DNA from: Octopus bimaculoides
Taxonomy: Eukaryota
Length of the DNA stretch: 64,000 nt
Direction of reading: 5' to 3'
NCBI RefSeq assembly: GCF_001194135.2
Contig: NC_068992.1
Coordinates: 27,799,936-27,863,935, forward strand
A model generated the notes under the pieces. The model saw only the letters and a list, made by a program, of their open reading frames with translations, had not been told where the DNA came from and did no database searches. Positions 1,890 to 54,970 of this stretch are shown here, piece after piece (position 1 is the first letter of the stretch; the number at the start of each line of letters is the position of its first letter). The position numbers and the translations under genes are program-made.

Positions 1890-2447
1890 TGTTCTTTTAT
1901 TCCTTTACTTGTTTCAGGCATTTGACTGAGGCCATGTTGGAACACTGCCTTTAGTAAAAAAAAATCAGCCCCAGGACTTATTCTTTGTAAGCCTAGTACT
2001 TATTCTATCGATGTCTTTTGTTGAACCTCTAAGTTATGGGGATATAAACACACCAGGTGAGGAGACAAGCACCACTGTCCTGTTTTTGTTACCACTTTCT
2101 ACCTATGCAAAAAATCCCAAATTTTATATAATTTGCATTGCAGGAAGGACTGTTTTGATGAAATCGCGTCTTGTCCTTACCTTCAAAACGCAGAGTAGAT
2201 AAAACAGGGGACAACTGCATGTCTCGTTTCTCTGTTTGTTTTTTCGATGTTCAAAAAAAATTTCATTTTTTATGTTTTTGTTTTTTATGTTCTCGTTTCA
2301 CATTCTGTCTAAGTTTTTTTGATGTCCTGTACTCATATATGCATGTATATATACATATGTAGGTATGTACATATATGTATGTATATATGCATGATCAAAT
2401 GCCACACACCCTTTTCCAAGTAAGTTTTATATATATACATATATATA

Positions 2448-2480
<33 letters not shown>

Positions 2481-2983
2481 NNNNNNNNNNNNNNNNNNNN
2501 NNNNNNNNNNNNNNNNNNNNNNNNNNNNNNNNNNNNNNNNNNNNNNNNNNNNNNNNNNNNNNNNNNNNNNNNNNNNNNNNNNNNNNNNNNNNNNNNNNNN
2601 NNNNNNNNNNNNNNNNNNNNNNNNNNNNNNNNNNNNNNNNNNNNNNNNNNNNNNNNNNNNNNNNNNNNNNNNNNNNNNNNNNNNNNNNNNNNNNNNNNNN
2701 NNNNNNNNNNNNNNNNNNNNNNNNNNNNNNNNNNNNNNNNNNNNNNNNNNNNNNNNNNNNNNNNNNNNNNNNNNNNNNNNNNNNNNNNNNNNNNNNNNNN
2801 NNNNNNNNNNNNNNNNNNNNNNNNNNNNNNNNNNNNNNNNNNNNNNNNNNNNNNNNNNNNNNNNNNNNNNNNNNNNNNNNNNNNNNNNNNNNNNNNNNNN
2901 NNNNNNNNNNNNNNNNNNNNNNNNNNNNNNNNNNNNNNNNNNNNNNNNNNNNNNNNNNNNNNNNNNNNNNNNNNNNNNNNNNN

Positions 2984-3029
<46 letters not shown>

Positions 3030-3393
3030 TCTATAGAACTCAAGACAAGCATTACAAAAGATAGCAAAAACAAAGTATATAAAACATAAAAGTTAGTGCT
3101 ATCATGGTTGTTTTACATACATATATGTATATTTATGTATATACATATATATATATTTATTTATGTATATACATACATAAATATATGTATGTATGTATGT
3201 ATATAAATATATATGTATCCATCTAAAAAACAACCACAATAACGATAACTTGTATGTTTTGTATATTCTGCTTTCGTTTTCCGTTTTTTTTTTTTTTATT
3301 CTTAGGTTCCACAGAACGTTGTTTTTTGGGGGGTTTTTTTTGTTTTTTCTCAGGGATTATGTCTGCAAATGTTCAAACTCAATTAAACATTAC

Positions 3394-3523
3394 ATCTTTT
3401 CCTTGAAGTTTGAATCGCTTTTAAAAATGTGCCTTGCTTGCTCCACAAATATCGTTTTGCTTATTGTCGTTGGTAATTGTTTCTGAAATTTCTGGACAGC
3501 CGACTTAATGATGGAGTGTTTGT
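3394..3523 (-). CDS. Candidate exon xKHSIIKSAVQKFQKQLPTTISKTIFVEQARHIFKSDSNFKEK (same gene or a second one)
   Basis: T-rich acceptor ...ggtaattag|, phase 1 in. Ends at AT|gtaatg, or reads on to a stop at 3390. The link to the upstream exons is not established. Confidence 0.4.
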
Positions 3524-3555
3524 CTAATTACCAGACGACAAAAAAAAAAAAAATA

Positions 3556-3586
<31 letters not shown>

Positions 3587-3965
3587 AAACTAAAGAAAAG
3601 AAAATGTAAAGAGCCAAAGCAACACAGTGCATGGTGCTAATACTGTAATAACAACAGTGACAGATGAGAATACAAGATATGTTAGTCCCTTTCAGCAGTA
3701 AGATCACACTATGAAAATATAAAATGGGAATATGGTGACATTAATAACTGGCAATAACACAAAGAAAGCCTTCCACAAAGATTCTAGCAATTAAGCACAG
3801 GCAGACTGTAAGTTTAGGAGAAGGCTGTAGGAAAGAAGTCTGGCAGAGGTTGAGGTTTTTAGTATAAACTATGTTAACCAATCACAGTGAATGTGCATGC
3901 GTGTGTCTGTGTGTATCAAATTAGATATGAGTAGATAAAATATATAGCCAAAATTAGCAATATAT

Positions 3966-4018
<53 letters not shown>

Positions 4019-4027
4019 TACATACAT

Positions 4028-4058
<31 letters not shown>

Positions 4059-4071
4059 TATACACATACAT

Positions 4072-4136
4072 ACATAAATACATATATGAGAGACACAGAC
4101 AGACATACAAGCAAAAACAGACAGATGTGTGTGTGT

Positions 4137-4178
<42 letters not shown>

Positions 4179-4280
4179 TACATAAATACATATATGAGAG
4201 ACACAGGCAGACATACAAGCAGAAACAGACAGATGTGTGTGTGTGTACTATATATATATATATATATGTACACACACACA
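4072..4280. repeat. Tandem duplication of a ~105-bp microsatellite-rich unit
   Basis: Two copies of taaatacatatatgagagacaca...cagatgtgtgtgtgtgtactatatata. Confidence 0.8.
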
Positions 4281-4283
4281 TAC

Positions 4284-4314
<31 letters not shown>

Positions 4315-4773
4315 GGGAGGAAAAGAGAGAGTGTTCACTTTTATGTCTCTTTTTCCATGCAAGCATGGGTTAGATGAATATATTGTTGAGGGCATTGTTT
4401 TTACATTCAGCTGCCCGTCTTAGTATTAACCCGTAACTGTTTCTCAAGTAAGGGATCCCTTATTTCACATGTTTCTAAAGATACAAAGCCAATGGATGAA
4501 TTGTTGACAGAAGAAATGACAACAACACCATTTTTAGCTTGCAATTTTCAAAGTAGTGCAAATGTCAACAGATTCACACACACACACATACATAAATACC
4601 AGGCTTCTTTCTGTTTCCATCTATCAAATCCACTCTCAGAGCTTTGGTCAGCCTGGAGTGATTGCAGAAGACATTTGTCCAGGGTATCACACAGTGGAAC
4701 TGAACTCAAAACTACATGGTTGCAAAGTAAACTGCTCAGCTACACAATTGTGCATGCACAGCACCCTCTCTCC

Positions 4774-4858
<85 letters not shown>

Positions 4859-6755
4859 CAAGCACAGCTGTTTTGTTAGGGCATTGACTTCACAACCATG
4901 TAGTTTCAGGATCGGTGTTGCAGCTTGGGCAAATATCTTCTACTGTAGCCCAGGGCCAACGGGAGCTTTGTGAGCATGCTTGGTAGGTGGGAACTGAAAG
5001 AAGTCTATTGCATGTGTGTGTATTTGTATGCCTGTTTCTCTAGGCGGGGATACAACAATCACACACATCTAGAGACACACTACACAATAATCGTAAACAA
5101 ATGGTACCATCATATAAGCAGTGTTGTTCATTTGCAATCTCCCACAAAAATATGTCCAGCCATTGTGCTGTTTGTGTTGGACAGGACCAGAGGGAGTAAC
5201 TTGCTTGGAAACAAGTAAAAGTTGGCAAGCATGGAAAAGCAGACATTAAAATGAGAAGAGGATGATGATGATGAACGAAGTACATGGACAATAAATTAAT
5301 GGAAAGGACAATAGATAGCTATGGAATGGAAACCGTTGTCAGCCTTGTTATCTGCAATCATAACAGTTTTGGCACTGATAAACACTATTATATAAGGCTA
5401 GAAATGAGAAGCTCTTACTTACACAGACTCAGCTTTGAATAATTAATATTAAGTGCAAATTGTATGGTGTTTGCATACAAAGTGCAACGCTGCATGGTAG
5501 CAGATGTGGCCTTCAATGCAAAAGATTAGTGATGGTACAAAAGAAATGAAGCAAACATGCTCCACTGGACATGTAATGTTTGTGCACATGAATAACAGAG
5601 CACAAAATGAGCTGAGAGGAAAACTAGATATAAGAGGAATCATATGTAGTGTACTAAAGAGAAGACTGTGTTGATATAGATACATATGATGTGTATGAAG
5701 GATGTCAGTTGTATAAATAAGAGCTAAGTGCTCAAAGTGACTGGTATCTATGGAAGAGAGAGACTTAAAAAGACGTGGAATAAAGTAGTGAAGACTGATC
5801 TCAACAAGTTGAACCTCATGCTAAAAATGACAAAAAACTGTGAAAATTGGCAACAAGCAGTGTTACAGAAGGCTTAACCAGTGATACAAAACATGGCAAA
5901 AAGAGTTGTTGAAAAGATGGTGCAGATGGCAGTTAAGATGTCTACATTGGATCTCTTGCATTGTTTATTTGCATTAAAACACCATTTACTTCCTTGTTTG
6001 TTAACCTCTCATCTATCTCTAACCTTCTCTCTTATCATTCTATTGTCCCATGTGTAACAAGGAATGGCATTTCTCTGTCAATACTGAATCCTGCCATCAC
6101 TACCCTTCACTTTATCTTTTTCCTACCCTCACTCATTCTGCCTCTGTTCTATTATGATGCCTCTTGTATGAACAATGTCACTGAATCTGTCCATATCCAG
6201 TAACTTCTACCAACTCTTCTTTATTGCCAGTTATAATTCTTTCTCCCCTCTATACCACCACTCTGACCATTACCTTATCTTTATCACTATCCATCTCTTG
6301 TTCTCTGAATGTAAAGATTCCCTAAGCCATCTGTTATAATTTCATTCATCTCTAGAATGTTTTATAAGAATATTACATCAACTCACATAACTTACGGGTT
6401 TCTTTATTTTACCAATTCCTCAGCCCACACCATCCAGATGATTAAACACTGATTTTGGTAGGATATGAGAACAGAATATAAATGGTTGCAACCAAATCAG
6501 TAGTTCTCAACCAGGGTTCATAGGACCTCTAGGAGTCCATATAAGACATTTGAGGGGGTTCACACAAGCATAGTAAATCACACATCCACAGAAGTATCTT
6601 AAGGGTTCATGAATAAATTTTGCTTTAGATGTATTTATTGCAAGAATCAGCTCAGTTTCTTTCTTTGACATTTTACATAGCTCAACCTACACAAGTTAAG
6701 GAGTGAAGAACAAAATAGAAATTTTGAAAGAAATTTCTATAAACCTAATTTTTAA

Positions 6756-7396
6756 CCCACTCATGCCGAAATTGTTCTGGTGAATGAAATTGCCTGAAAA
6801 TTCACAGATACTATTATTTTGGCCTAAATGACAACTGAAAAAAATTTCATTGAAATCCATTTGATACAGACTCTCTTTACTCTTTTACTTGTTTCAGTCA
6901 TTTGACTGCGGCCATGCTGGGGCACCACCTTTAGTCGAGCAAATCGACCCCTGGACTTATTCTTTGGAAGCCTAGTACTTATTCTATCGGTCTCTTTTGC
7001 CGAACCGCTAAGTTACGGGGACGTAAACACACCAGCATCGGTTGTCAAGCGAAGTTGGGGGGACAAATACAGACACACAAACATACACACACATACATAT
7101 ATATATACATATATATGACGGGCTTCTTTCAGTTTCCATCTACCAAATCCACTCACAAGGCTTTGGTTGGCCCGAGGCTATAGTAGAAGACACTTGCTCA
7201 AGGTGCCACGCAGTGGGACTGAACCGAGAACCATGTGGCTGGTAAGCAAGCTACTTACCACACAGCCTGCATACACATTAAGAACATGTTTCATTCTTTG
7301 ATACAGACCATACACAAGTCATGATTTGTATCAAGTATTTGTTTCATACCCTTATAAATTAAGTGTCAGTTTAAACAGACAATCAGCATGAATGGG
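6756..7396. mobile_element. TTAA-flanked (piggyBac-like) MITE nested in the hAT MITE
   Basis: TTAA|CCCACTCATGCCGA ... TCAGCATGAATGGG|TTAA. Confidence 0.75.
6873..7268 (-). mobile_element. Abundant tRNA-derived SINE with an internal (TA/CA)n tract
   Basis: Near full-length copy. Related pieces at 1885-2062, 4570-4745, 10625-11225, 19250-19480, 23800-23925, 30000-30280, 37450-37845, 39180-39560, 53866-54046 + 54970-55240 and 62355-62520. Confidence 0.85.
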
Positions 7397-7955
7397 TTAA
7401 ACATTGAATGACTGTGACATGTTCACCAGAATAAAATAGTAATCAAAGGGGTCCATAGACAAAAAATGGTTGAGAACCACTGAACTAAATATTTGCAAGC
7501 ACTTTGTCCAATGTTTTAGTGATTCTGTTAATTTACTACCTACGAGATAATTTGGTACTCATTCTTGTTAAAAGCCATAAGTAGTTCCTTCCAGTTTTTT
7601 ATTATAAATAGGAGATCTTTAATTGAAAATAAAGATGAATTTTAATAGAAAGTAGAGAGGGACTTCCCACCAAAACACACTTCTACAGGTAAAAACTTTC
7701 ATAGAAATAATTATAATTTTGCTATTGTTGCTGATGTTGTTTGCTTATTCTTATTCTGAGATCTGGTTGAACAAACTTATGACCATTCATCTCTTGACCT
7801 TTTATTCTGGCATTCATAGTGCATCAAGAAACGTCCTTCCTTTTTGAGGCCAAGCAGAATGGGATTTTGGGAATATTTGGTTGTTATTTCAAGCAATTGA
7901 GTGACTGCATAGAGGCTCCTTGTTTAGTTTGTATGGCTCCCTCATTGATGATGAT

Positions 7956-7987
<32 letters not shown>

Positions 7988-8200
7988 AGGTGGTAAGCTG
8001 GCAGAATCATTAGCACACCAAGCGAAATGCTAAGCAGTATTTCGTTCTGAGTTCAAATTCCACCGAGGTCACCTTTCATCCTTTCAGGGTCGATAGATTA
8101 AGTACCAGTGAAACACTGGGAATTGGTGTAATCGATTAGTTCCCACCTTCCCCAAAATTTCGGCCTTGCATTTATAGTAGAAAGCATTATTATTATTATT

Positions 8201-8748
8201 GAGTGAGAGAGTAGTGCATGCCATCAAAGTGACACTGGGGTAAAATATACGAAGCCCAGTATACCCATCATGATTACTCGTCTGATAAGGGTACACCAGT
8301 CACATGCATCGCAACCATATGTGTGTGACATGATGATTTCCTATCAAGATAAACAGCACATGACCTTGCAGGTGATGACCTATTAGAATTTTCTTCAGTT
8401 CAGGTAGCCAAACCCGCTCAAAAGGTCCCTGAATAAGGGTTGTTTAAGGATGTTGAACGAAACATCCATGTTTCCAGAGGTGAATTATCCAAACCCCAAA
8501 GAATTCCTCTCAACACATGGCTATGACGCTCCCCCACTACTTCTGCTCATGATCAGAGATGCACATATCGTCAGCCACTAAGGGACATGCTCAACTGATT
8601 AAAGTCAAACAAATGACAAGCAAATCTGTGGTATTTAGCAGAATATTTGCTGTAGCCTACCTTTTATCCCAAGACAAAACAACGTACATGATAACACTTC
8701 CGATCAGTTAAGATCAGAAGCCATGAGAGCCACTGCCTGATACTGCTA
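8201..8748 (-). mobile_element. Unclassified ~550-bp element flanked by (ATT)n, probably a non-autonomous retroelement
   Basis: More GC-rich non-coding block between ATT tracts, splitting SINE-family sequence. Family recognised from memory only. Confidence 0.5.
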
Positions 8749-10942
8749 TTATTATATTAGAAAAGAATTTCGTAGAGGCCAACTTTCTGCAGTTCATAAA
8801 ATAAGTATTAGTTGAGTGCTGGAGTTGATGTAACTGACTAGCTCCACCTCCATAAAAAAATTTTGTGGTCTTGTGACTATAGCAGAAAGGATTATTGTTG
8901 TCATAAAAGAAATCATTATCATTATCAATAAGGCGGCGAGCTGGCAGAATCATTAGCACACCGGACAAAATGCTTAGCGTCATTTCGTCTGTGTTCAAAT
9001 TCCGCCCAGGTCGAGTTTGCCTATCATTCTTCGTAATTGACTCACTTGTTCCCTAACATTGCTAGACTTGTGCCAAAACTTGAAAGTAGGAGTAGTATAG
9101 AAGGGATTTAAGAAGTAATCGTTATAAGGACAGACAACTGGAATAAGATAAAACTATAATTCATAATTGATTTCTAGTAAATTGCTGCATTTCAAATGTT
9201 AGAAAACTTAATTATTTTAAGAAATTACCCTCTCTGAAGCAAAATCTATTTTAAATCTGTCAAGGGGATAGGAGTGGGTTGTTTTGGGATTTTTTTTTCT
9301 TTAATATTTCTCTGAATCTTTAATGATTTAATACCAATATTCGTTTCATATAATTTACAACTTCAAGGGAGATAACTAGCAACAACAGTAGTTTCCCATT
9401 ATTAAATGGCAATAAAACTGTTTTAGTAAATTAATTTCTGTGTTACGGAAAATTATAGAATACTTATCAGTAATTATACAATATAAAACTAATAATATGT
9501 AGCCAACCTAGTTTAAATTTTTAAAAAAAGTCATTTATCAAGAAAAGGCATAAATTGTTATTGAAAGTCTCATTTTTTTTAAAACAAAAGTAAAAGTATA
9601 AGGAACTTGAATCTTCGTTTTAATGGCCAGCTGCAGTCTCATTTCTTTTGCATTGTTATGGCCTTTAAAAAATACTTGAAGATTACATAATCCAACCTCT
9701 ACTTTTATATTCAAAACAAAAAGAAGCGGGTTAAATTATATTATGTAAAAATCTAATTTTCTCCACTTATTAACACACGAAACATTGCACGTTTATTTAC
9801 CGAATTTACTCGTGTGCACGTCGCACTATTTTATACTTGATCTTAACTGAAAAAACTGCGGCGCTACTTATACATGGGGCAAAGCTGATTTCAAGTTTGA
9901 TGATGAAGGGAAAAAATTTTGTGCTTGGATTTACACAGTTGCTATTCTTTCGTAACTATTTTGGCCAGTTCGGTTAAGTTTGTCCTTCTTTGAAGTGGTC
10001 CAACAGTACCGAATCATATCCGGGTTTGTATCACTTACTGGAATATTGAAAATAATAGCTATTGTCTTTTCTTCCATGCATTATTCCTAATTAACTTTTT
10101 TTTAATGCTCGTTATATCTCGGGAGGGTCATTACTGCCAATAATAAACACACGCACAGGTCCTATTTCACTTCTTCCTTTTTTTTTGTCTATTAACTATT
10201 TATACCATTTAACTAACTGATTGTTTGATTACTCGTTCGGTCAATCAATCAGCTTTATCAAAATCCTTTCGTTACTAATAGCGACCCCATCAATGACATT
10301 CCTTCTCTGCTCCAAGTCTGCTTCTGGTCTGTTTCCTAGTTTACGGGTTCTATATTTATATAAATATTTTAATGCGCGCTACATTAAATATAATGGTTTC
10401 GACGATGAGCATCTGGTTGTTTGATCATCCAAAATATCTACTCACTCGTTAAATTAAGCTGGTTAGTTACCGTATCAATCCTTGATCATAATTCTCAGCT
10501 TGAATTCGCGTAACATAATATGTGACAAGGTTGGGCCTGTGAATTACAGGTGTAATCTATTTGATAAACTTCCACACAGTTTCCACGTAAGCAATTTCCT
10601 TCACAAGGTTTAGATGAAGAAACTTGATAGGAGCGGCTGTGTTGTTCAGTCCCACAGCGTGGCATCTTGGACAAGTGTCTGCTACTATAGCTTCGGGCCG
10701 ACCAGAGCCTTGTGAGTGGATTTGGTAGACGAAAACTGAAAGAAGCCCGTAGTATATATATATATATATATATATATAAAGTTGTAGTGTATTGTCAACT
10801 TAATGTGACAATCCCAATAAGGGAACACACTACTGCCGTTTAGCCCTAGGAAGCTGGACCGCTTCCTGTCGGCCTTGACACAATTACTGTGTCCTTAAGT
10901 TTGCGAGGGGGAGACAAGCTCCTCCACCCAGCCTAGCCAGCA

Positions 10943-10985
10943 TTCAGGGACATGTTTCTGAGTCTTTGCTCGTCATCAGCATGAA
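10943..10985 (-). ncRNA. Minimal hammerhead-ribozyme-like motif
   Basis: UUCAUG CUGAUGA cGAG-caaaga-CUCa GAA ACAUGU C^ CCUGAA: intact core, palindromic stem III, GUC cleavage triplet. Confidence 0.65.
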
Positions 10986-12335
10986 GTAGCTTGCCATATA
11001 TATGTATGTATGTATGTATTTGTTATCTGTGTTTGTCACCTCCACCATCACTTGACAACCGGTGTTGGTGTGTTTACGTCCCCGTCACTTACCGGTTCGG
11101 CAAAAAGACACCATATAGAATAAGTACTAGGCTTACAAAGAATAAGTCCTGGGGTCAATTTGTTCGACTAAAAGGCGGTGCTCCAGCATGGCCGCAGTCA
11201 AATGAACGAAGCGCGTAAAAGAATATGCGATACTGAAATCCTGTTCCAAATTATGCCACCCTCACAGAAAGACAATTGAAACGATTCTGCCGATTGAAGT
11301 GGCAATAAATATTGATGAAGGAGCAACACTGAAAAGGAAGAAATCCTGTTGATGAGAATTAACACAATTAAAGGGAAGTTGGTGTTGGACCACATAGACG
11401 AGTCCAACACCTTACCACGAACGACCAACAGTAGTGTCTCTATGTAAGGTACATAACTCTGTTTACTCTAATTTCACTGTCTTCACAGTTGAAAAGTTGA
11501 TAGTGGAAAGAATACCTAACTGTAAATACAACTTTTCGAAAAGATAAGCGACGAGTGTTAATGTGGTCGTTAGATACGCTAGAAACAGCAGCCAGATCTC
11601 TCACAAATCACATTTTAACATTGTAGAAAACGAAAGTGACACTGGGCAATATAAAAAAAAAGATCAGCAAGCCATGCTTAAAATGCCTTTGAGGATTCCT
11701 TCATTCAATGCTAACCTGGGGTTAAATAACAACTGCTTTAACAAACAAAAAATACCCCAATACATGTAAACACGCAAAAATTAATACAAAACAATAAAAA
11801 TTGACAAATCAAAACTCAGAGTGAAGTTCACTTTTTTTTATGCTTTTTTTTTTCCACATGACTGATAATTATAAATAAAAATACTTAAAATGTTCATTTA
11901 CTTTTAATTAGAAAATTAGCTGAAGTGTACAGCATTTTTTATTAAAACTATATGACCCTCACCACTTTCAACAATGGAGATTTTGCAGGGAAGTTCTGGG
12001 TAGACCCAGTCAGTTTTTAGTGAGCGGATTCATGTGATTTATTAAATCAATATACAGTGACTGTGGCAGCATGCCATTACTATGTATTTCTTGATAAAAG
12101 AGAAGTTGATCGATCATTACCGGATTCCAGCAGTAAACATATCTATTAAATTACAGTGTTCGATAGCATAAAAGAGACATAAACATATTAGATTCAACCC
12201 ACTTTCAGCAGTATATACCTAGGAAAAAAAATTTTTTTAGTGCATTAAAACATGTATTATAGGCACAAATTTGCATATAGGACTCAGAATGATTTTTTTT
12301 TTTTTGAGACATATTTTTGGAAAGAAATGTCTTAC

Positions 12336-12401
12336 ATGCCACGAAATACAGTAAACAATTATGAAACTTGAGACGCCTCTGTATTTTTAGGTATGTTTCA
12401 A
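12336..12401 (-). CDS. 66-nt exon (F)ETYLKIQRRLKFHNCLLYFVA
   Basis: Acceptor attctttttcag|, donor T|gtaaga; phase 1-1. Confidence 0.6.
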
Positions 12402-12748
12402 CTGAAAAAGAATTCTTTATCATTTGGGATTTTAACCTGTAAACCTTCACTACAGTCAACAGAAGATTTTGGTGGAGAATTAAAAGACAGCTTTGCCACC
12501 AATGTTACATGTTGCTGTGCTCCACATTGTTCCTATTATTAAGGAATGGATACCAATACTTTTAGAGATGAATTTGCTAACATAGGCCTTCCCTTTAGTT
12601 CCTGATTACTAAGTTGTCAAAATGGTAAGAGGTTGGAACATGCAAATCTGACAATTACAATAACAGGGATCTGAAATATTTTATTATCAATACATTAACA
12701 ATTTGTTTTTTGCAAAATTGCATCCAAATTTTACATATATCAGTAATA

Positions 12749-12780
<32 letters not shown>

Positions 12781-12970
12781 CTCCATCCTTACAGAGTTCA
12801 CTTTATTACCATATAGTCTTGAATTCTATCTCACAGTACAGCACCTTGAACAAGTGTTTCCTTCAGTTGCCTAGGGCCAAGCAATTCTATGTAAGTGAAA
12901 TTGACAAGCTGCATGGAAACCCATCATGTGTGTGTGTGTGTGTGTGTGTGCGTATATATATATATATATA

Positions 12971-13829
12971 NNNNNNNNNNNNNNNNNNNNNNNNNNNNNN
13001 NNNNNNNNNNNNNNNNNNNNNNNNNNNNNNNNNNNNNNNNNNNNNNNNNNNNNNNNNNNNNNNNNNNNNNNNNNNNNNNNNNNNNNNNNNNNNNNNNNNN
13101 NNNNNNNNNNNNNNNNNNNNNNNNNNNNNNNNNNNNNNNNNNNNNNNNNNNNNNNNNNNNNNNNNNNNNNNNNNNNNNNNNNNNNNNNNNNNNNNNNNNN
13201 NNNNNNNNNNNNNNNNNNNNNNNNNNNNNNNNNNNNNNNNNNNNNNNNNNNNNNNNNNNNNNNNNNNNNNNNNNNNNNNNNNNNNNNNNNNNNNNNNNNN
13301 NNNNNNNNNNNNNNNNNNNNNNNNNNNNNNNNNNNNNNNNNNNNNNNNNNNNNNNNNNNNNNNNNNNNNNNNNNNNNNNNNNNNNNNNNNNNNNNNNNNN
13401 NNNNNNNNNNNNNNNNNNNNNNNNNNNNNNNNNNNNNNNNNNNNNNNNNNNNNNNNNNNNNNNNNNNNNNNNNNNNNNNNNNNNNNNNNNNNNNNNNNNN
13501 NNNNNNNNNNNNNNNNNNNNNNNNNNNNNNNNNNNNNNNNNNNNNNNNNNNNNNNNNNNNNNNNNNNNNNNNNNNNNNNNNNNNNNNNNNNNNNNNNNNN
13601 NNNNNNNNNNNNNNNNNNNNNNNNNNNNNNNNNNNNNNNNNNNNNNNNNNNNNNNNNNNNNNNNNNNNNNNNNNNNNNNNNNNNNNNNNNNNNNNNNNNN
13701 NNNNNNNNNNNNNNNNNNNNNNNNNNNNNNNNNNNNNNNNNNNNNNNNNNNNNNNNNNNNNNNNNNNNNNNNNNNNNNNNNNNNNNNNNNNNNNNNNNNN
13801 NNNNNNNNNNNNNNNNNNNNNNNNNNNNN

Positions 13830-22916: not shown

Positions 22917-24531
22917 AGATTTAAATACAATTGTTATTGAACATAACATCCCTGGCAAATGATCGGCATGCTACTGGAGTCTTGCAAATAGGTCTGTTTC
23001 TCTTCTTTCAAAACTGGTGCTTATATCTTCAAATTTTACCCTAATGCCCCTAATTAGTAATTTCAGCTCTAAAGTTTGCACCTTACTGTTTATTTAAGAA
23101 CAAATTTCATTTCCCAATTTTTTTATTTCATTTATTTCATATTAACATTTGTTTGCTTTAAATAAAATATGAGTGCCACAAACACTTCTTTCAAAAAATC
23201 ATACAGAAAGATATAATGGATACCGACTGTAGTTGAACAGTTGACCAAATGGCTAAAAAATAAAAACCCAAATATTAAGGTACTAGTGGCGGGGAGTACA
23301 GGGAATAAAAATGATAATAATAATAATAATAGTAATAATGTTGAAATGAGTTTGTGGATGATTGATCACTTTGAGAGTGACAGCTGTAATGACGTCATCA
23401 CCCAGAACAGATGTGTACCAGACTGCAGACAACAGTTGTTTACACTTAAAACAACTTGTGTGTATGCATGTGTGTGTGTATTATTGTTTAACCCCCAGAT
23501 CAACCTGAATAAACTTATGATGACAGCTACAACTATTCAACCATCTGTTTCCTTTTACTTCAGGGACTACATGGTCAATATTCTTCTCATTTTACATTTT
23601 TTTTTTTTTTTTCTAAGATAGTGGAATATGATTTGAGAAAAGTTTGACAGTTATTTCTAGCAGGCTGAGTGACTCCACAGAGCAGTGTTTCTCAACCCCT
23701 TTAATATCTGGACTAGATCCAAAACCTGGATTTTTTTTAGGGGCCTGCATCAAAAAAAGTAAAACACAAGTCAACCAAACAAAAATTTATTATATTTATA
23801 GGCATGGCTGTGTGGTAAAAAACTTGCGTTCCAACCATATGGTTCCCAGTTCAGTCCCACTGCATGACACTTTGAGCAGGTGTCTTTTACTATAGCCTTG
23901 GGCCAACCAAAGCCTTGTGAGTGGATANNNNNNNNNNNNNNNNNNNNNNNNNNNNNNNNNNNNNNNNNNNNNNNNNNNNNNNNNNNNNNNNNNNNNNNNN
24001 NNNNNNNNNNNNNNNNNNNNNNNNNNNNNNNNNNNNNNNNNNNNNNNNNNNNNNNNNNNNNNNNNNNNNNNNNNNNNNNNNNNNNNNNNNNNNNNNNNNN
24101 NNNNNNNNNNNNNNNNNNNNNNNNNNNNNNNNNNNNNNNNNNNNNNNNNNNNNNNNNNNNNNNNNNNNNNNNNNNNNNNNNNNNNNNNNNNNNNNNNNNN
24201 NNNNNNNNNNNNNNNNNNNNNNNNNNNNNNNNNNNNNNNNNNNNNNNNNNNNNNNNNNNNNNNNNNNNNNNNNNNNNNNNNNNNNNNNNNNNNNNNNNNN
24301 NNNNNNNNNNNNNNNNNNNNNNNNNNNNNNNNNNNNNNNNNNNNNNNNNNNNNNNNNNNNNNNNNNNNNNNNNNNNNNNNNNNNNNNNNNNNNNNNNNNN
24401 NNNNNNNNNNNNNNNNNNNNNNNNNNNNNNNNNNNNNNNNNNNNNNNNNNNNNNNNNNNNNNNNNNNNNNNNNNNNNNNNNNNNNNNNNNNNNNNNNNNN
24501 NNNNNNNNNNNNNNNNNNNNNNNNNTGGTAT

Positions 24532-27428: not shown

Positions 27429-27988
27429 TATATATACAGGGTGCGATAGGTAAATTGCCACCATTTTATATTTTAAATTTTACGCATGCACATTGTTTGT
27501 TTTTGATTTTGTTGACTACACAATACAGTAGGGTCAGTTGGGCACTGTCTGTGAGAAAAACAGTACCATGACGCAGTTCACTCTGCCAGAAATTTGGAAA
27601 CGACATGCTGCATTCACATCGGAAACTCCAATACGAACATTTCAGAGTGTTTGGGTGTCGATCTAAGGACAGTGCAACCTGAGGACATGTACCGAGAATG
27701 ATAAAAATCAAACATCCAGTCAACATCATGGTGTTTGGAGTGATCACTAGTGAAGTACCTGGAGGAGGTAGTTCTGCCCTGGGTCAAGAGGGTGGCTGCT
27801 GGAAGATCCCGTATCTGGCAACAGAGATCTGCACCATGCCACACAAGCAGGAGAACCCAGTCATGGCTGTCAGACAATTTCTGTGACCACACCACCCCTA
27901 ACATCTGGCCACCTAATTCCCCAGACTGCAACCCTCTTGATTATTATGTGTGGAGTGCAGTGGAGCAAGAGACCAACAAAACTCCTTG

Positions 27989-29405
27989 CACATTGTGCCC
28001 AGGCTAGCTAATTCAGGGAAAAAATCATATCTTGGGTTAAAATAATCACCTGATAATGGTTGAGGGCTCGTTTGAACCACAATTTTAAGGACTAACAGCT
28101 GGAACCAAAATTATTTGTTTTTTTCTTTGTTTATGGGGGTCTGGGTCCAAATAACCAAATCAGGGCATATCAACCAAAATTGCCTTTTTGGTGCATTGTG
28201 GTTAACAATGATTATCTGCAAGATTTCACCAGCTTTCAATCAAGGATAACATCCATGACACTTTTAGAAGAATGTTCATCATGTCGCATCCAGCAATTGC
28301 TTCAAAACATCCCAGCCCAAGTTGTCCTGTTTGTGGTGAAGTTGGTCACACAGCTTGTTCTTTAAAACATAAGGTGTCTGCTTTGACAGAACAATCAAGA
28401 ATCAAATCCCTATATTACTGACTGGTCCATGTTACGCATATTTATTGTTTGGCATTGTTGTTTCAATATTTGTTGTGAATAATAAGCGACCAGTTTTCAC
28501 AATTTAATGCAAATGATTCTGATTTTCTTTGTGAATCAAGGGGGAGGGTGGTTCGTTGTATTTTTCCTTGTGGGGTGGGAGACTATGGTAATGTTTCAAT
28601 CCAGGGATTTGTTGGGAATATTTTCTTTTTGTTATCTCGTGTTTTGGCTCTTCTTCAATTTCAGCGTTAGCAAGGCAAAATCCTCCAAACCGGAATCTGA
28701 TCTTCCTAATCAGATTTTTACCCATAAAATAGGCTAAATACCAAAAAAAGGGTATTTAAGATCAATTATTTCAAGAAATTTATTAGGTTTTAGGTCTATT
28801 TTATGTTTCCTCTTTTTATACCTGTTTAATCACATTGGGGGTCAATAACTACCGATTTTACCCAATTTTGGTTGGTTTTGATGTTTGATACCCAAATTGG
28901 AATTTTACTTTCTGTTTGGCCTTTTAACCCCTTTGAACTGATTTTTTTTCCACAGTTTACATAAAATGTTGAGGATGTCAAATATGTTAGCCCTTAATAT
29001 GTCAAAATTTGTCATTTTTTTTTGTAAATTATCAAGTTTGAGGGGGTTTTACAAAAAATTTGGATATTTTTCATGCATCCCCTATTTTCTCAAATTTATG
29101 TTGGCCTATGTACTCAAAGCTGTTGCTTGACTGAAAGACAATAAAAATTCTTCTAAATAAGTTCAAACAGGTTAAAAATCTTTTTTGTGAAAGAAAATAT
29201 GTTCAATCATATAATACTAAAAAAAATGTAAATTTCGTTAAAATGGCCGACTTTAAAGAGCTATAAAAATTGAACCATACATTATTTTAAACTCAGGTTT
29301 TTTTGCTTTGTAATCTCTTAAGTTTAGAGAACTAGAAAATATGTATTTTAAACATCTGGAGGGAAACTTCTAAAGATGATAAATTCCCACTCTGAGCACA
29401 ATGTG
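27989..29405 (+). mobile_element. Transib/RAG-like DNA transposon relic, 1417 bp
   Basis: TIRs CACATTGTGCCCAG and (reverse complement) CACATTGTGCTCAG match 13/14. Exact 5-bp TSD CCTTG at 27984-27988 and 29406-29410. Confidence 0.75.
28135..28421 (+). pseudogene. Frameshifted RAG1L/Transib-like transposase C-terminal remnant
   Basis: GGLGPNNQIRAY (frame +1), then LSARFHQLSIKDNIHDTFRRMFIMSHPAIASKHPSPSCPVCGEVGHTAC (frame +3). Resemblance is from my recall of the family motif, not from a search. Confidence 0.55.
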
Positions 29406-31306
29406 CCTTGTAACACCAAAGATGAACTTCAAGGATTATGGCAGCATTCACCAACTTAAATAAGGAGATCGTTCAGAAGAGTTACAGGAGATTTCAAAGT
29501 TGTCTATAGGTCATGGTTGAAGCCAATGGCAATTTTGTTCAATAAATTTACTCTTTAGTATTTCAAGATATTTTTATGTAGGTAAATATAACTGTTAAAA
29601 TGAGATGTCAGTGTTATTTTCATTTTTACGTAATTTAGACAACAGTTTATTCACCACACCCTGTATATATGTAAAAGTGCAAATGTAAATGTTAACAAAT
29701 TATTGCAAATCATAGGGTATGCTTTGAGGGAGACTTGACAGCTGTTTCAAACACATCAAGCAACCAAGTAGAGCTCCTTCATTGAAATTGTTTTCACTGC
29801 TATCATAATTGTTTGACATAAATATCCACTCATGGATGTGTGGTTAAGAAGCTAGTTTTGCAAGCATGTGGTTTCAGGTTCAGTACCACTGTACAGTATC
29901 TTGAACAAGTGTCTTCTACAGTAGCTTCAGACCAACCAATGCTTCATCAGTGAAATTGGTAAATGGAAATTGTGTAGAAACTTATCATGTGCATGTCTAT
30001 GTGCATGTGTGTATGTGTGTGTGTTTTTGTGTCTGTGTATGTCACTTCTGCCTGCTATTTGACAACTGGTGTTGGTTTGTTTATATCTCTGTGACTCAGT
30101 GCTTCAGCAAAAGAGATCAATAGAATTGGCAGTACCCCAGCTCTTGAGCTGAAACTAGTAAAAAAGTAAAAGAAAAGAAAGACTTAAAAGAATAAATAAG
30201 TACTAGGGCCAATTTGTCCAACTAAACCCTTCAAGGCAGTGCCCCAGCATGGTCACAGTCCAATGACTGACACAAAGTAAGGGATACAAGATATGTGTGT
30301 CCGCCTGTGTGCGTGTGTAGAATGGACAAAACGTTATTGGTAGATGAAAAGTGTATGGAAGCACCTTGTGTGTATGTGTGTGTGTGTGCGTGCGTGTTAA
30401 CATTCCATGTCCTTGTTATCTAAGTAAAACACTGATAAGATGGTTACGCTGCTTGTTGCCATCACAACTGGTGATTCTGCACTTTCAGAAACCAGTGGAA
30501 TATGAAAAAGAAATTCCTTACTTAAAAAGCCAGGTAAGGGTTGGCTACAGGAAGAGCACCTGGCTATCAAATACTGCCTCAAATGATTCTGTGTCCAACC
30601 CATGCTAACATGGAAGAACACATGATGAACAAAAGAATGATCTCATTCTTACAGATATACCTGATAATGGTGACCAATTTATAGAACTGGTCTACCAAAA
30701 CGGATACTTTAACCCCCTGTGCATTTTAAGGAGAAGGACTTAGCTCTGACTTCAAAGCACTGAGCAAACAAGAGAAAATAATCACCTCTCAGAGTCTATT
30801 GTAAGATTAGTGCAGAAAATGATGATGATAATGGGGTACACTATTTTCAAGAGTTCACGTAAAAGCACCCACTACACTCTCGGAGTGGTTGATGTTAGGA
30901 AGGGCATCCAGCTGTAGAAACTCTGCCAAATCAGATTGGAGTCTGGTATAACCATCTGGTTCACCAGTCCTCAGTCAAATCGTCGAACCCATGCCAGCAT
31001 GGAAAGCGGACGTTAAACGATGATGATGTTGATGATGATGATGATGATGATGATGAAAAGGGCTGAAGTAATAAAAGGTACCAGAAACACATCAAAATAC
31101 CTGAAGTAAGCAAACTTTTCTCAGTTCAAATATGCTTGGGATATATTTGATCGGTAAAGAAGCATTTTCACTGTGGTTGCCATGGGAAAAAAAAATGTTT
31201 GCTTTAGGTCAAAGATGTTAAGTCCATAAAGGGATGTTCTGAAGTGAATTTGGTGTTTTTAACACCTTTTGCCAAAATCAAGAATTTTTCTCCATAGCAA
31301 ACTGCT

Positions 31307-35229: not shown

Positions 35230-36787
35230 ATCATCATCATCACCATCGTTTAACGTCCGCTTTCCATGCTGGCATGGGTTGGACGGTTTGACTGAGGACT
35301 GGTGAGCCAGATGGCTGCACCAGGCTCCAATCTGATCTGGCAGAGTTTCTACAGCTAGATGCCCTTCCCAACGCCAACCACTCCGAGAGTGTAGTGGGTG
35401 CTTTTACATGCCACCAGCACGAGGGCCAGTCAGGTGGTATTGGCAATGGCCATGCTCAAATGGTGTTTTTACGTGTCACCTGCACAAGAGCCAGTCCAGT
35501 GGCACCGGCAACGCCCTCGCTCAAATGTTGTTTTCCATGTACCACCAACACAAGTACCAATAAAGCGGTGCTTTTTACGTGCCACCAGCACGGGGGCCAG
35601 TCAGCGGCGCTGGCGACAATCACGCTCAGATGGTGCTCTTAGCACTCCACTAGCACAGATGCCTGTCATGCAGTGCTGTCATCGAATTTGATTTTGATTT
35701 CGATTTCACTTGCCTCAACAGGTCTTCACAAGCAGAGTTTAGTGTCCAATGAAAGAAAGGTATGCCTAAGTGGGCTGGTTACACCACTGGCATAGGCCAC
35801 AGGTTATGGTCACACTTAGCTTGCCGGGTCTTCTCAAGCACAGCATATTTCCAAAGGTCTCGGTCACTAGTCATTGCCTTGGTGAGGCCTAATGTTCGAA
35901 GGTCATGCTTCACCACCTCATCCCAGGTCTTCCTAGGTCTACCTCTTTCACAGTTTCCCTCAACCGCTAAGGTGTGACACTTTTTCACAGCTATCCTTAT
36001 CCATTCGTACCACATGACCATACCAGCGCAGTCGTCTATCTTACACACCACAACTGATGCTTCTTAGGTCCAACTTTTCTCTCAAGGTACTTATACTCTG
36101 TCTAGTATGCACACTAACATTACACATCCAGCAGAGCATACTGGCTTTGTTCCTTGCAAGCTTACGCATGTCTTCAGTGGTCACGGCCCATGTTTCACTG
36201 CCATGTAGCACGGCTGTTTGTACACATGCATCATACAGTCTGCCTTTTACTCTGAGCAAGAGGCCTTTTGTCACCAGTAGAGGTAGGAGCTCTCTGAACT
36301 TTGCCCAGAGTATTCTTATTCTAGCAGCTACACTTTCAGAGCACCCACCCCCACTACTAACTTGGTCACCTAGGTAATGGAAGCTATCAACTACTTGTAG
36401 TTTTTTCTCCCTGGAATGTGGTAGAAGTTGTTCTCTACACATTTTCAGTGTTTATTGCTCCTGAGCATCTGGCACATACAAAAACTATCTTCCTATTTAG
36501 CCTTCCTTTGATATTGCTGCACCTCTTATGTGTCCATAGCTTACACTGGGTACATCTTATAGAGTTTCTACCTACGCCTTTTCTACAGATCGAGCAGGGC
36601 CATCTACATGAAGGGGTTTGTGGTTTGTTTGCCTTTCTACTTATTAGGACTTTGGTTTTAGCTAAGTTGACTCTAAGGCTCTTCGATTCTAATCCTTGCT
36701 TCCACACCTGAAACTTTTCATCTGGTTCTGATAGTGACTCAGCAATTAGAGCAAGGTCATCAGCATAGAGGAGCTCCCATTGCAAAT
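35230..36787 (-). mobile_element. 5'-truncated RTE-clade LINE (RT from the YADD motif to a (GAT)n tail)
   Basis: ELLYADDLALIAES...KTKVL, VDSFHYLG, RVKGRLYDACVQTAVLHGSETW; frameshifted; 3' tail of CAT repeats on the plus strand at about 35230. Confidence 0.92.
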
Positions 36788-36889
36788 AAATATAAATAAT
36801 ATAGAAATATACTGGTTCCAAATTTTGACACCAGGCCAGCAATTTCTGAGGAGTGAGTAAGCTAATTGCATTAATCCCAGTGCACAACA

Positions 36890-54047: not shown

Positions 54048-54970
54048 GGGAGAATATGCAAATAATAACAACAGACGAGGACAGGTGGTGTAAATAACAA
54101 AAGGATATATTAGTATGACGCTCGGGAATACGGAAAGTCTTTGACGTTTCGAGCTACGCTCTTCAACAGAAAGAATACGGAGACAAGGAGAAAACACGGA
54201 GAAAAAAAAAAAATTGAATAGTGTTCAGTCAACGGTCAATCATGTGTGTGTATATATATNNNNNNNNNNNNNNNNNNNNNNNNNNNNNNNNNNNNNNNNN
54301 NNNNNNNNNNNNNNNNNNNNNNNNNNNNNNNNNNNNNNNNNNNNNNNNNNNNNNNNNNNNNNNNNNNNNNNNNNNNNNNNNNNNNNNNNNNNNNNNNNNN
54401 NNNNNNNNNNNNNNNNNNNNNNNNNNNNNNNNNNNNNNNNNNNNNNNNNNNNNNNNNNNNNNNNNNNNNNNNNNNNNNNNNNNNNNNNNNNNNNNNNNNN
54501 NNNNNNNNNNNNNNNNNNNNNNNNNNNNNNNNNNNNNNNNNNNNNNNNNNNNNNNNNNNNNNNNNNNNNNNNNNNNNNNNNNNNNNNNNNNNNNNNNNNN
54601 NNNNNNNNNNNNNNNNNNNNNNNNNNNNNNNNNNNNNNNNNNNNNNNNNNNNNNNNNNNNNNNNNNNNNNNNNNNNNNNNNNNNNNNNNNNNNNNNNNNN
54701 NNNNNNNNNNNNNNNNNNNNNNNNNNNNNNNNNNNNNNNNNNNNNNNNNNNNNNNNNNNNNNNNNNNNNNNNNNNNNNNNNNNNNNNNNNNNNNNNNNNN
54801 NNNNNNNNNNNNNNNNNNNNNNNNNNNNNNNNNNNNNNNNNNNNNNNNNNNNNNNNNNNNNNNNTATATATATATATATATATATATGGGAGAATATGCA
54901 AATAATAACAACAGACGAGGACAGGTGGTGTAAATAACAAAAGTATATATTAGTATGACGCTCGGGAATA
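54048..54970. repeat. 83-bp direct repeats (54048-54130 and 54888-54970) flanking an N gap, within (TA)n
   Basis: Offset 840 bp, one mismatch seen. Confidence 0.8.
54138..54174 (-). ncRNA. Minimal hammerhead-like motif (A6U variant)
   Basis: UCUUU CUGUUGA A GAGC-gua-GCUC GAAA C GUC^ AAAGA. Confidence 0.55.

What the first reader, a model, noticed from the sequence alone, without database searches (positions are those of the whole stretch)
28135..28421. Degenerate RAG1L-type C-terminus with a CTT-like CxxCxxxGH motif
Seen: GGLGPNNQIRAY, then after a frameshift LSARFHQLSIKDNIHDTFRRMFIMSHPAIAS followed by CPVCGEVGHTAC. Established, from recall: the Transib/RAG1 C-terminus has the pattern E..NK.iR..r...AR.....n..Dvf.Rl...S[DH]P, and invertebrate RAG1L proteins carry a C-terminal tail CX2CX3GHX4C. 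The motif here is CX2CX3GHX2C at the expected position. That would lean towards RAG1L over a plain Transib.
Basis: partly seen in the sequence, partly recalled or inferred. Interest (0 to 1): 0.75.

Follow-up and report, generated by a model that had tools for sequence, protein, structure and literature searches.

The report
Dead, internally deleted Transib transposon copy
The peptide is the last ~69 codons of a Transib "cut-and-paste" transposase left in a 1.4-kb gutted transposon copy that landed inside another dead transposon; it is a relative of the RAG1 family but not a RAG1-like gene, and it is ordinary genomic debris.

Summary
Window 28215-28421 (+) is the true C-terminus of a RAG1/Transib-superfamily transposase: tblastn E down to 7e-22 to a family of about 700-730-aa proteins, whose profile hits HzTransib at E=1.4e-50. 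"GGLGPNNQIRAY" (28135-28170) is translated non-coding 5' subterminal DNA. No frameshift links it to the rest: a roughly 2.3-kb internal deletion removed the whole catalytic core, including the real E-x2-NK motif.

The element spans 27989-29405 (1417 bp). It has CACATTGTGC terminal inverted repeats (TIRs) and a perfect 5-bp target-site duplication (TSD), CCTTG, and it sits inside a decayed Tc1/mariner-like transposase ORF. Full-length relatives (4.0-5.0 kb, each with its own 5-bp TSD) carry one transposase gene and no RAG2-like gene or RING N-terminus. They score far better against HzTransib (175.7 bits) than against amphioxus RAG1L (79.8).

The zinc knuckle is real and family-wide, and about half the members have canonical CX2CX3GHX4C. 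Published work already reports this tail in Transibs, so it does not favour RAG1L. The window's last Cys replaces a conserved Arg. Verdict: a non-autonomous Transib fossil, of low interest.

The parts
27984..27988 (.). 5' target-site duplication, CCTTG
   Evidence: The identical 5-mer flanks both ends. Joining the flanks restores a continuous mariner-like reading frame ...ETNKTPCNTKDEL....
27989..28038 (+). 5' terminal inverted repeat. Heptamer-like CACATTG at 27989-27995, conserved TGCCCAG next to it, and a second A-rich box GGGAAAAAAT at 28016-28025 (20 nt after the heptamer).
   Evidence: Aligns with the 5' ends of L002, L004 and L005, which start CACAGTGTGCCCAG.
27989..28200 (+). 5' subterminal non-coding region.
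   Evidence: blastn to L001 7641-7842 and to the L005 5' subterminal repeats. There is no similarity to the transposase end beyond chance. In full copies the ORF starts 700-860 bp after the TIR.
28192..28215 (+). Internal deletion junction. About 2.3 kb is missing relative to L001 7842-10118, which is the whole DDE core and the E-x2-NK motif.
   Evidence: blastn co-linearity breaks here. tblastn finds no other transposase fragment anywhere in the window.
28215..28421 (+). Remnant of the transposase C-terminus: the last ~69 codons plus the stop. It covers the end of the C-terminal domain (..SAR..QLSIKDNIHDxFRRMxIxSHPxIAS) and the tail.
   Evidence: tblastn E to 7e-22. It aligns to HzTransib ...SRQASNEDILNMLIISSDPLISFTRPK through the family profile. 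The stop is at the same position as in family members (...SMYY*).
28323..28358 (+). Zinc-knuckle-like motif CPVCGEVGHTAC. The family form is CxxCGEVGHTARS..H; the canonical form in other clades is CX2CX3GHX4C.
   Evidence: Survey of 51 family tails. Window TGT against L001 CGG at the Arg position.
28422..29355 (+). 3' non-coding region of the element
   Evidence: 62-74% DNA identity to L001 10328-11507 in all frames. No coding signal is conserved across subfamilies.
29356..29405 (-). 3' terminal inverted repeat. The reverse complement reads CACATTGTGCTCAGAGTGGGAATTTAT. Heptamer at 29399-29405; second box at 29379-29388, 10 nt after the heptamer.
29406..29410 (.). 3' target-site duplication, CCTTG
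27480..27983 (+). Left part of the decayed Tc1/mariner-like transposase remnant into which the element inserted (...WPPNSPDCNPLDYYVWSAVEQETNKTP)
   Evidence: Pfam DDE_3, weak and below threshold; motif reading
29411..29545 (+). Right part of the same mariner-like remnant (CNTKDEL..RIMAAFTNLNKEIVQKSYRRFQSCL*VMVEANGNFVQ*)

Best explanation
Window 27989-29405 is a 1417-bp, internally deleted, non-autonomous copy of a Transib DNA transposon. A Transib transposase supplied by another copy cut it out and pasted it into a Tc1/mariner-like element, creating the 5-bp duplication CCTTG.

The copy keeps both ends. The TIRs read CACATTGTGC..., and a second A/T-rich box lies 10 bp further in on the 5' end than on the 3' end. 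It also keeps about 200 bp of 5' subterminal DNA, the last ~69 codons of the transposase, and the ~1-kb 3' untranslated part. The ~2.3 kb encoding the DDE catalytic core is gone, so the copy cannot encode an enzyme.

Shown: element boundaries, TSD, TIRs, the deletion, homology to Transib, and absence of RAG2L in full-length relatives.

Inferred:
- The deletion arose by abortive gap repair, before or after this insertion.
- In intact family members the knuckle tail helps to clamp the TIR next to the heptamer (the invariant TGCCCAG), as the CTT* of amphioxus RAG1L does.
- The window's terminal Cys is an Arg-to-Cys substitution with no function.
For: - Perfect 5-bp TSDs and CAC-heptamer TIRs occur at four independent insertions: window CCTTG, L002 TAATG, L004 CATTT, L005 CGATG.
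- Joining the flanks gives an empty site that restores the mariner ORF.
- Co-linearity with L001 shows a 2.3-kb gap.
- tblastn hits only 28212-28418 in the window, with E to 7e-22.
- The family profile against PDB gives HzTransib E=1.1e-36, rising to 1.4e-50 with the larger profile, well ahead of BbRAG1L at 1.3e-9 and then 1.4e-21.
- The AF2 model has pLDDT 87.6. All 49 significant Foldseek hits are RAG1, BbRAGL or HzTransib, and HzTransib has the highest target TM-score, 0.83.
- Full elements contain only the transposase ORF. Their 3' regions show no conserved coding signal.
- The knuckle is conserved in 50 of 51 tails surveyed.
- The literature reports 5-bp TSDs and RSS-like TIRs as Transib features (PMC8355894) and CTT1/CCGHC tails in Transibs (PMC9435367, PMC10462144).
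Against: - Only about 70 residues of the protein survive in the window, so the family assignment rests on relatives 60-78% identical in DNA or protein, from unnamed ENA assemblies.
- RAGL transposons also make 5-bp TSDs and have CAC TIRs, so those two features alone do not exclude RAGL.
- Absence of RAG2L was judged from ORF lists and tblastx, not from a kelch/RAG2 profile scan of the non-coding parts.
- No phylogeny with curated RAG1L and Transib sets was made.
Confidence: 0.93

Rival explanations
1. It is a decayed RAG1-like (RAG1L) gene, a fossil of a RAGL/ProtoRAG-type transposon.
For: The tail carries a CxxCxxxGH knuckle of the type that defines CTT* of invertebrate RAG1L (PMC7204232). 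Family members have a GRP motif in the N-terminal part, like the RAG1 nonamer-binding domain. They also keep a ~46-aa stretch after the ZnC2 CxxC that HzTransib lacks and that aligns with BbRAG1L. Foldseek matches RAG1 as strongly by E-value as it matches HzTransib.
Against: Sequence profiles favour HzTransib by about 96 bits. The proteins are 700-730 aa with no RING/ZDD. Elements of 4-5 kb hold no second gene. The CCGHC tail, the GRP motif and asymmetric TIRs are all already reported in Transibs (PMC10462144, PMC9435367).
Confidence: 0.03
2. The CPVCGEVGHTAC motif is a retroelement gag zinc knuckle, unrelated to the upstream peptide.
For: The pattern C-x2-C-x4-H resembles zf-CCHC, and Pfam zf-CCHC gives weak hits on family tails (14.8 and 13.2 bits). 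The window contains retroelement debris elsewhere.
Against: The hits are below the cut-off of 20.8 bits. The knuckle is contiguous, in frame, with the Transib C-terminal domain in about 50 independent proteins. It lies inside a TIR/TSD-bounded DNA transposon. No gag, protease or RT lies adjacent.
Confidence: 0.01
3. The remnant is an exapted or domesticated short ORF (for example MFIMSHP...SLYY, 28272-28421) that the host expresses as a small zinc-binding peptide.
For: 69 codons are free of stops, and the stop codon is kept at the ancestral position.
Against: Sixty-nine open codons is unremarkable for a relatively young copy. The conserved Arg has mutated. The fragment lacks the N-terminal 90% of the protein. 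It sits in a TE-in-TE context with no detected promoter or exon evidence, and no orthologous conserved copy was found.
Confidence: 0.02

Closest known systems
Transib superfamily DNA transposons (Kapitonov & Jurka 2005); the structurally solved member is Helicoverpa zea HzTransib (PDB 6pqn and related entries)
   Same: RAG1-core-like DDE transposase fold (profile E=1.4e-50; Foldseek target TM-score 0.83). Single-gene element, 5-bp TSD, and TIRs beginning with an RSS-like CAC heptamer (the family consensus CACAGTG is identical to the RSS heptamer). The same C-terminal-domain motif ...D(I/L)(F/L)xxxxIxS(H/D)P.I(A/S).
   Different: Compared with HzTransib, family proteins are about 200 aa longer at the N-terminus, with a GRP-containing region. 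They keep a ~46-aa stretch after the ZnC2 CxxC that HzTransib lacks. They end in a CCGH(C) zinc knuckle rather than the HzTransib-type tail. The window copy has lost everything except the last 69 codons.
Subgroup I Transibs of Tao et al. 2022 (PMC9435367)
   Same: They are described as Transibs that keep the CTT1 (CCGHC) tail, the alpha11-alpha12 region and asymmetric TIRs. This family shows a CCGHC tail, a segment in the corresponding position and 12/22-type TIR asymmetry.
   Different: Membership was not tested by phylogeny.
Invertebrate RAG1L of RAGL/ProtoRAG transposons (amphioxus BbRAG1L, PDB 6b40; protostome RAG1L, PMC7204232)
   Same: Same superfamily and fold, 5-bp TSD, CAC TIRs, and a C-terminal CX2CX3GHX4C tail that in BbRAG1L clamps TIR DNA.
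   Different: No partner RAG2L gene, no RING/ZDD N-terminal region, about 700 aa rather than about 1100 aa, and a much weaker sequence match (79.8 against 175.7 bits).

Membership tests
Transib DNA transposon | Transposase homologous to the RAG1 core / Transib DDE transposase | tested here: met
   Window remnant: tblastn E to 7e-22 to the family. Family profile against HzTransib: E=1.4e-50. Pfam RAG1 PF12940: 24.8 bits, just under the cut-off of 25. Foldseek: all 49 significant hits are RAG1, RAGL or Transib. The window itself keeps only the last ~69 codons.
Transib DNA transposon | 5-bp target-site duplication | tested here: met
   Window CCTTG/CCTTG, L002 TAATG, L004 CATTT, L005 CGATG. The empty-site join restores the mariner ORF.
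Transib DNA transposon | TIRs starting with a CAC (RSS-heptamer-like) sequence | tested here: met
   CACATTGTGC at both window ends. The family consensus is CACAGTGTGCCCAG.
Transib DNA transposon | A single transposase gene, with no RAG2-like partner | tested here: met
   In L002, L004 and L005, no ORF above about 125 aa lies between the TIRs apart from the transposase. There is no conserved coding signal in the 3' regions. No kelch/RAG2 profile scan of the non-coding DNA was done.
RAG1L / RAGL (ProtoRAG-type) transposon | Convergent RAG2L (kelch propeller) gene inside the same TIRs | tested here: not met
RAG1L / RAGL (ProtoRAG-type) transposon | Long N-terminal region with a RING/ZDD domain and C1-C3 cysteine pairs (protein of about 1000 aa or more) | tested here: not met
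   Full-length members are 700-730 aa. Pfam finds no RING or zinc-finger dimerisation domain.
RAG1L / RAGL (ProtoRAG-type) transposon | CTT* with Cx2Cx3GHx4C | tested here: inconclusive
   The canonical motif is present in 23 of 51 family tails. The window's clade has CxxCxxxGH with Ser at the fourth-Cys position and a His 6-7 residues on. The window's own 'x2C' is an Arg-to-Cys change. The feature is not exclusive to RAG1L (PMC9435367, PMC10462144).
RAG1L / RAGL (ProtoRAG-type) transposon | Closer in sequence to RAG1L/RAG1 than to Transib | tested here: not met
   175.7 bits on HzTransib, 79.8 on BbRAG1L and about 75 on RAG1. The smaller profile gives the same order, and so does the single L001 sequence, for which HzTransib was the only hit.
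Subgroup I Transib (Tao et al. 2022) | CTT1 tail, retained alpha11-alpha12 region, asymmetric TIRs, and phylogenetic placement | tested here: inconclusive
   The tail is met. A 46-aa segment absent from HzTransib aligns to BbRAG1L. The TIR second box is offset by exactly 10 bp between the two ends. Phylogenetic placement was not tested.
Retroelement gag zinc knuckle (Pfam zf-CCHC PF00098) | Above-threshold zf-CCHC match in a gag context | tested here: not met
   10.5-14.8 bits against a cut-off of 20.8. The window peptide gave no zf-CCHC hit. The context is a Transib transposase tail.

The most novel reading that the evidence does not exclude
The family to which this fossil belongs may be a little-described animal Transib lineage that combines four features in a one-gene element: a GRP-type nonamer-binding-like N-terminal region, the CCGHC DNA-clamp tail, the RAG2-contact-region equivalent that HzTransib has lost, and 12/22-asymmetric TIRs whose heptamer is the exact RSS consensus CACAGTG. 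That is close to the proposed Transib ancestor of RAG before it captured RAG2L. Some copies look recently active; L002 has an intact main ORF, 14-nt identical TIR tips and a perfect TSD. Such a lineage could serve as an experimental stand-in for that ancestor. The window's own copy would still be a dead derivative.
Probability: 0.3. Interest if true: 0.45.

Novelty: new member of a known kind. Interest (0 to 1): 0.15.

Why it matters
For this window it matters little. It is a correct transposable-element annotation: a non-autonomous Transib nested in a mariner-like remnant. It also removes a tempting but wrong RAG1L call.

The wider family is mildly useful for work on RAG evolution. It shows, in apparently intact elements, that a CCGHC tail, a GRP motif and 12/22-type asymmetric RSS-like ends can coexist in a Transib with no RAG2L. 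This agrees with published models (Tao 2022; Martin 2023) and does not change them.

Tried and rejected
- Pfam on the window peptide alone gave nothing useful: only a sub-threshold HMBD hit at 18-19 bits, and no RAG1 hit. The peptide is too short, so relatives were needed.
- A gag or zf-CCHC origin was considered and rejected; all hits are below threshold and the context is wrong.
- I considered whether 'GGLGPNNQIRAY' could be a frameshifted E-x2-NK motif or an internal duplication of the transposase end. It resembles NKHVRAF of relatives at the peptide level. This was rejected by DNA homology to the 5' subterminal region and by the shuffle test.
- I looked for RAG2L or any conserved coding signal in the 3' regions with tblastx and ORF lists and found none.
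- I looked for further transposase fragments or further copies of the element in the window and found none.
- The precomputed label PF26100.1 on several family proteins could not be reproduced with the local Pfam copy, so it was not used.
- A phylogeny with named RAG1L and Transib references could not be made. All three homologue searches returned only unnamed family members, apart from one krill protein.

Full report
**1. What is in the sequence**

Frame 0 gives FVYGGLGPNNQIRAYQPKLPFW from 28135. Another frame gives LSARFHQLSIKDNIHDTFRRMFIMSHPAIASKHPSPSCPVCGEVGHTACSLKHKVSALTEQSRIKSLYY*, ending at 28421. Immediately upstream (about 27480-27983) lies a decayed Tc1/mariner-like transposase remnant (WPPNSPDCNPLDYYVW...ETNKTP). 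It gives only a weak Pfam DDE_3 hit. Pfam on the short peptide itself was uninformative.

**2. Relatives**

A database search with the joined peptide found one protein, P0001 (108 aa, 65% identical, E=4e-22). It lies on an ENA assembly contig, fetched as L001.

L001 carries a fuller but frameshifted copy of the same gene (8470-10327), with three recognisable RAG1/Transib landmarks:
- KFGVDGSGSH
- GDSGTFCHLCHATR
- HQMCAHSWELF...ESWNKHVWSF...ARSCQLSIKDNIQDIFRRMLIMSHPVIASKRPHPSCSVCGEVGHTARS...MYY*

The L001 conceptual protein hits only HzTransib in the PDB (E=1.8e-9). Searching with its C-terminal half returned 45 relatives. A profile search then gave 119, many of them intact proteins of 700-730 aa. 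The only one from a named organism is from the krill Meganyctiphanes norvegica.

**3. Anatomy of the window copy**

blastn of L001 against the window gives three co-linear blocks:

| L001 | Window | Identity |
|---|---|---|
| 7641-7842 | 27991-28191 | 67% |
| 10118-10355 | 28218-28443 | 74-78% |
| 10642-11507 | 28620-29414 | 62% |

About 2.3 kb of L001, the whole catalytic core including ESWNK, has no counterpart in the window. tblastn of ten family proteins finds only 28212-28418 in the entire 64 kb.

The ends of the element are sharp. The 5' side reads ...AACT CCTTG|CACATTGTGCCCAGGC... The reverse complement of the 3' side reads ...CAAGG|CACATTGTGCTCAGAGTGGG.... The element is therefore 27989-29405 (1417 bp), flanked by the 5-bp direct repeat CCTTG.

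Joining the flanks restores a continuous mariner-like reading frame ...ETNKTPCNTKDEL..., which runs on to ...RIMAAFTNLNKEIVQKSYRRFQSCL.VMVEANGNFVQ*. This is a nested insertion with a verifiable empty site.

**4. The same architecture in relatives**

| Element | Coordinates | Length | TSD |
|---|---|---|---|
| L002 | 2018-5973 | 3956 bp | TAATG |
| L004 | 8518-13524 | 5007 bp | CATTT |
| L005 | 7087-11411 | 4325 bp | CGATG |

All three start and end with CACAGTGTGCCCAG, and the first seven bases equal the consensus RSS heptamer. A second A/T-rich box, G[GA]GAA[AT][AT][AT]AT, starts 20 nt after the heptamer at the 5' end and 10 nt after it at the 3' end, in all four elements with both ends intact (window, L002, L004, L005). 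In L002 the two TIRs differ by a clean 10-bp insertion. This is a 12/22-type asymmetry, of the kind already reported for some Transibs (PMC8355894).

Between the TIRs the only substantial ORFs are the transposase pieces. No other ORF exceeds about 125 aa. The 3' regions share no coding signal between subfamilies. There is therefore no RAG2-like gene.

**5. The first peptide segment is not coding**

The DNA giving GGLGPNNQIRAY aligns with the 5' subterminal region of L001 (there it reads RGLNPDNHIWAY) and with weaker counterparts in L004 and L005. In full copies this region lies 700-860 bp upstream of the start codon. L001 has this segment and, 2.3 kb downstream, its real ESWNKHVW motif.

A shuffle test shows that the window segment matches the L001 5' region (score 37 against 8.6 ± 1.6). 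It does not match the transposase end (9 against 8.9). The resemblance to E..NK.iR is coincidental, and the 'frameshift' is the deletion junction.

**6. Transib or RAG1L?**

| Profile | HzTransib | BbRAG1L | Vertebrate RAG1 |
|---|---|---|---|
| 10 sequences | E=1.1e-36, 129.6 bits | 1.3e-9 | about 5e-7 |
| 38 sequences | 1.4e-50, 175.7 bits | 1.4e-21, 79.8 bits | about 4e-20 |

Pfam RAG1 is just sub-threshold (24.8 against 25 bits), and no RING domain is found.

An AlphaFold2 model of P0048 (pLDDT 87.6) matches only RAG1, BbRAGL and HzTransib structures. The highest target-normalised TM-score is for HzTransib (0.83, rmsd 4.1 Å).

Taken together, protein size, the single-gene architecture, the TSD and TIRs, and sequence proximity place the family in Transib.

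Three features of the family are shared with RAG1 or RAG1L:
- a nearly invariant GRP motif near residue 100
- a 46-aa stretch after the ZnC2 CxxC that HzTransib lacks and that aligns with BbRAG1L
- the C-terminal knuckle

Tao et al. 2022 (PMC9435367) describe this combination for 'Subgroup I' Transibs: the CTT1 tail, the alpha11-alpha12 region and asymmetric TIRs. Martin et al. [quoted passage not shown] The knuckle is therefore not evidence for RAG1L.

**7. The knuckle itself**

| Tail form | Count (of 51) | Note |
|---|---|---|
| Canonical CX2CX3GHX4C | 23 | for example CKRCEKYGHTVRSC |
| CX2C-x4/5-H-x4-C | 2 | |
| CxxCGEVGHTARS-x2/3-H | 25 | fourth Cys replaced, usually by Ser; a His 6-7 residues after the first His |
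| Truncated | 1 | |

The window belongs to the third clade, as do L001 and the closest proteins. The window's 'GHTAC' has TGT where L001 has CGG and where the clade has Arg. The apparent 'X2C' is a substitution in a dead copy, not a variant ligand spacing.

By analogy with BbRAG1L CTT*, which clamps the TIR just inside the heptamer (PMC7204232, PMC10462144), I infer that the intact tail binds the invariant TGCCCAG next to the heptamer. This was not tested.

**8. Verdict**

The finding is a genuine fossil of a RAG1/Transib-superfamily C-terminus. It belongs to an internally deleted, non-autonomous Transib nested in a mariner-like remnant. It is not a RAG1L gene, and its first segment and its 'X2C' are coincidences.

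It is a new member of a known kind. Interest is low for the window and modest for the family.

Noticed in passing
window 27480-27983 and 29411-29545: A decayed Tc1/mariner-like transposase remnant (WPPNSPDCNPLDYYVW ... MAAFTNLNKEIVQKSYRRFQSCL) is split by the Transib insertion. It carries its own stops and frameshifts and gives only a weak Pfam DDE_3 match.
   Followed up: partly
L002 2018-2060 and 5930-5973; also L004, L005 and window 27989-28025 / 29379-29405: The family TIRs are asymmetric in a 12/22 manner. The heptamer is CACAGTG, identical to the RSS consensus. A second A/T-rich box lies exactly 10 bp further in at the 5' end than at the 3' end. In L002 the two TIRs differ by one clean 10-bp insertion.
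   Followed up: partly
L005 7085-7177, 7263-7313, 7440-7490: The 5' subterminal sequence corresponding to window 27987-28079 is present in three tandem-like copies in L005. These may be subterminal transposase-binding repeats.
   Followed up: no
alignment A4, residues 99-101 of P0048: A nearly invariant GRP(x)K motif sits in the N-terminal region of the family transposases. It is reminiscent of the GRPR/K motif of the RAG1 nonamer-binding domain.
   Followed up: partly
family proteins P0017, P0023, P0030, P0058 and others: The database lists a precomputed Pfam domain PF26100.1 for many family proteins. The local Pfam-A scan does not return this accession even at E<=10, so its identity is unknown.
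   Followed up: partly
L005 6407-7138 and 11409-12682: The Transib copy in L005 appears to have inserted into another ORF-bearing element (...CTVCP | VRCESCPGREGLKNF..., FFATSHGKSPCDGIGG...). That element was not identified.
   Followed up: no
window 36041-36887 (-) and 59567-60454 (+): ORFs of 133-295 aa look like fragments of non-LTR retrotransposon reverse transcriptase (for example YADDLALIAES, and LSADDCILIPHAFEGIQEIIDRF). They were judged by eye only.
   Followed up: no
window, 14 N runs (for example 12971-13829, 23928-24525, 54260-54864): There are 4026 N in assembly gaps. Most gaps are flanked by (TA)n/(TATATG)-like or (CA)n microsatellites, which indicates a draft, repeat-rich, AT-rich animal genome.
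   Followed up: no
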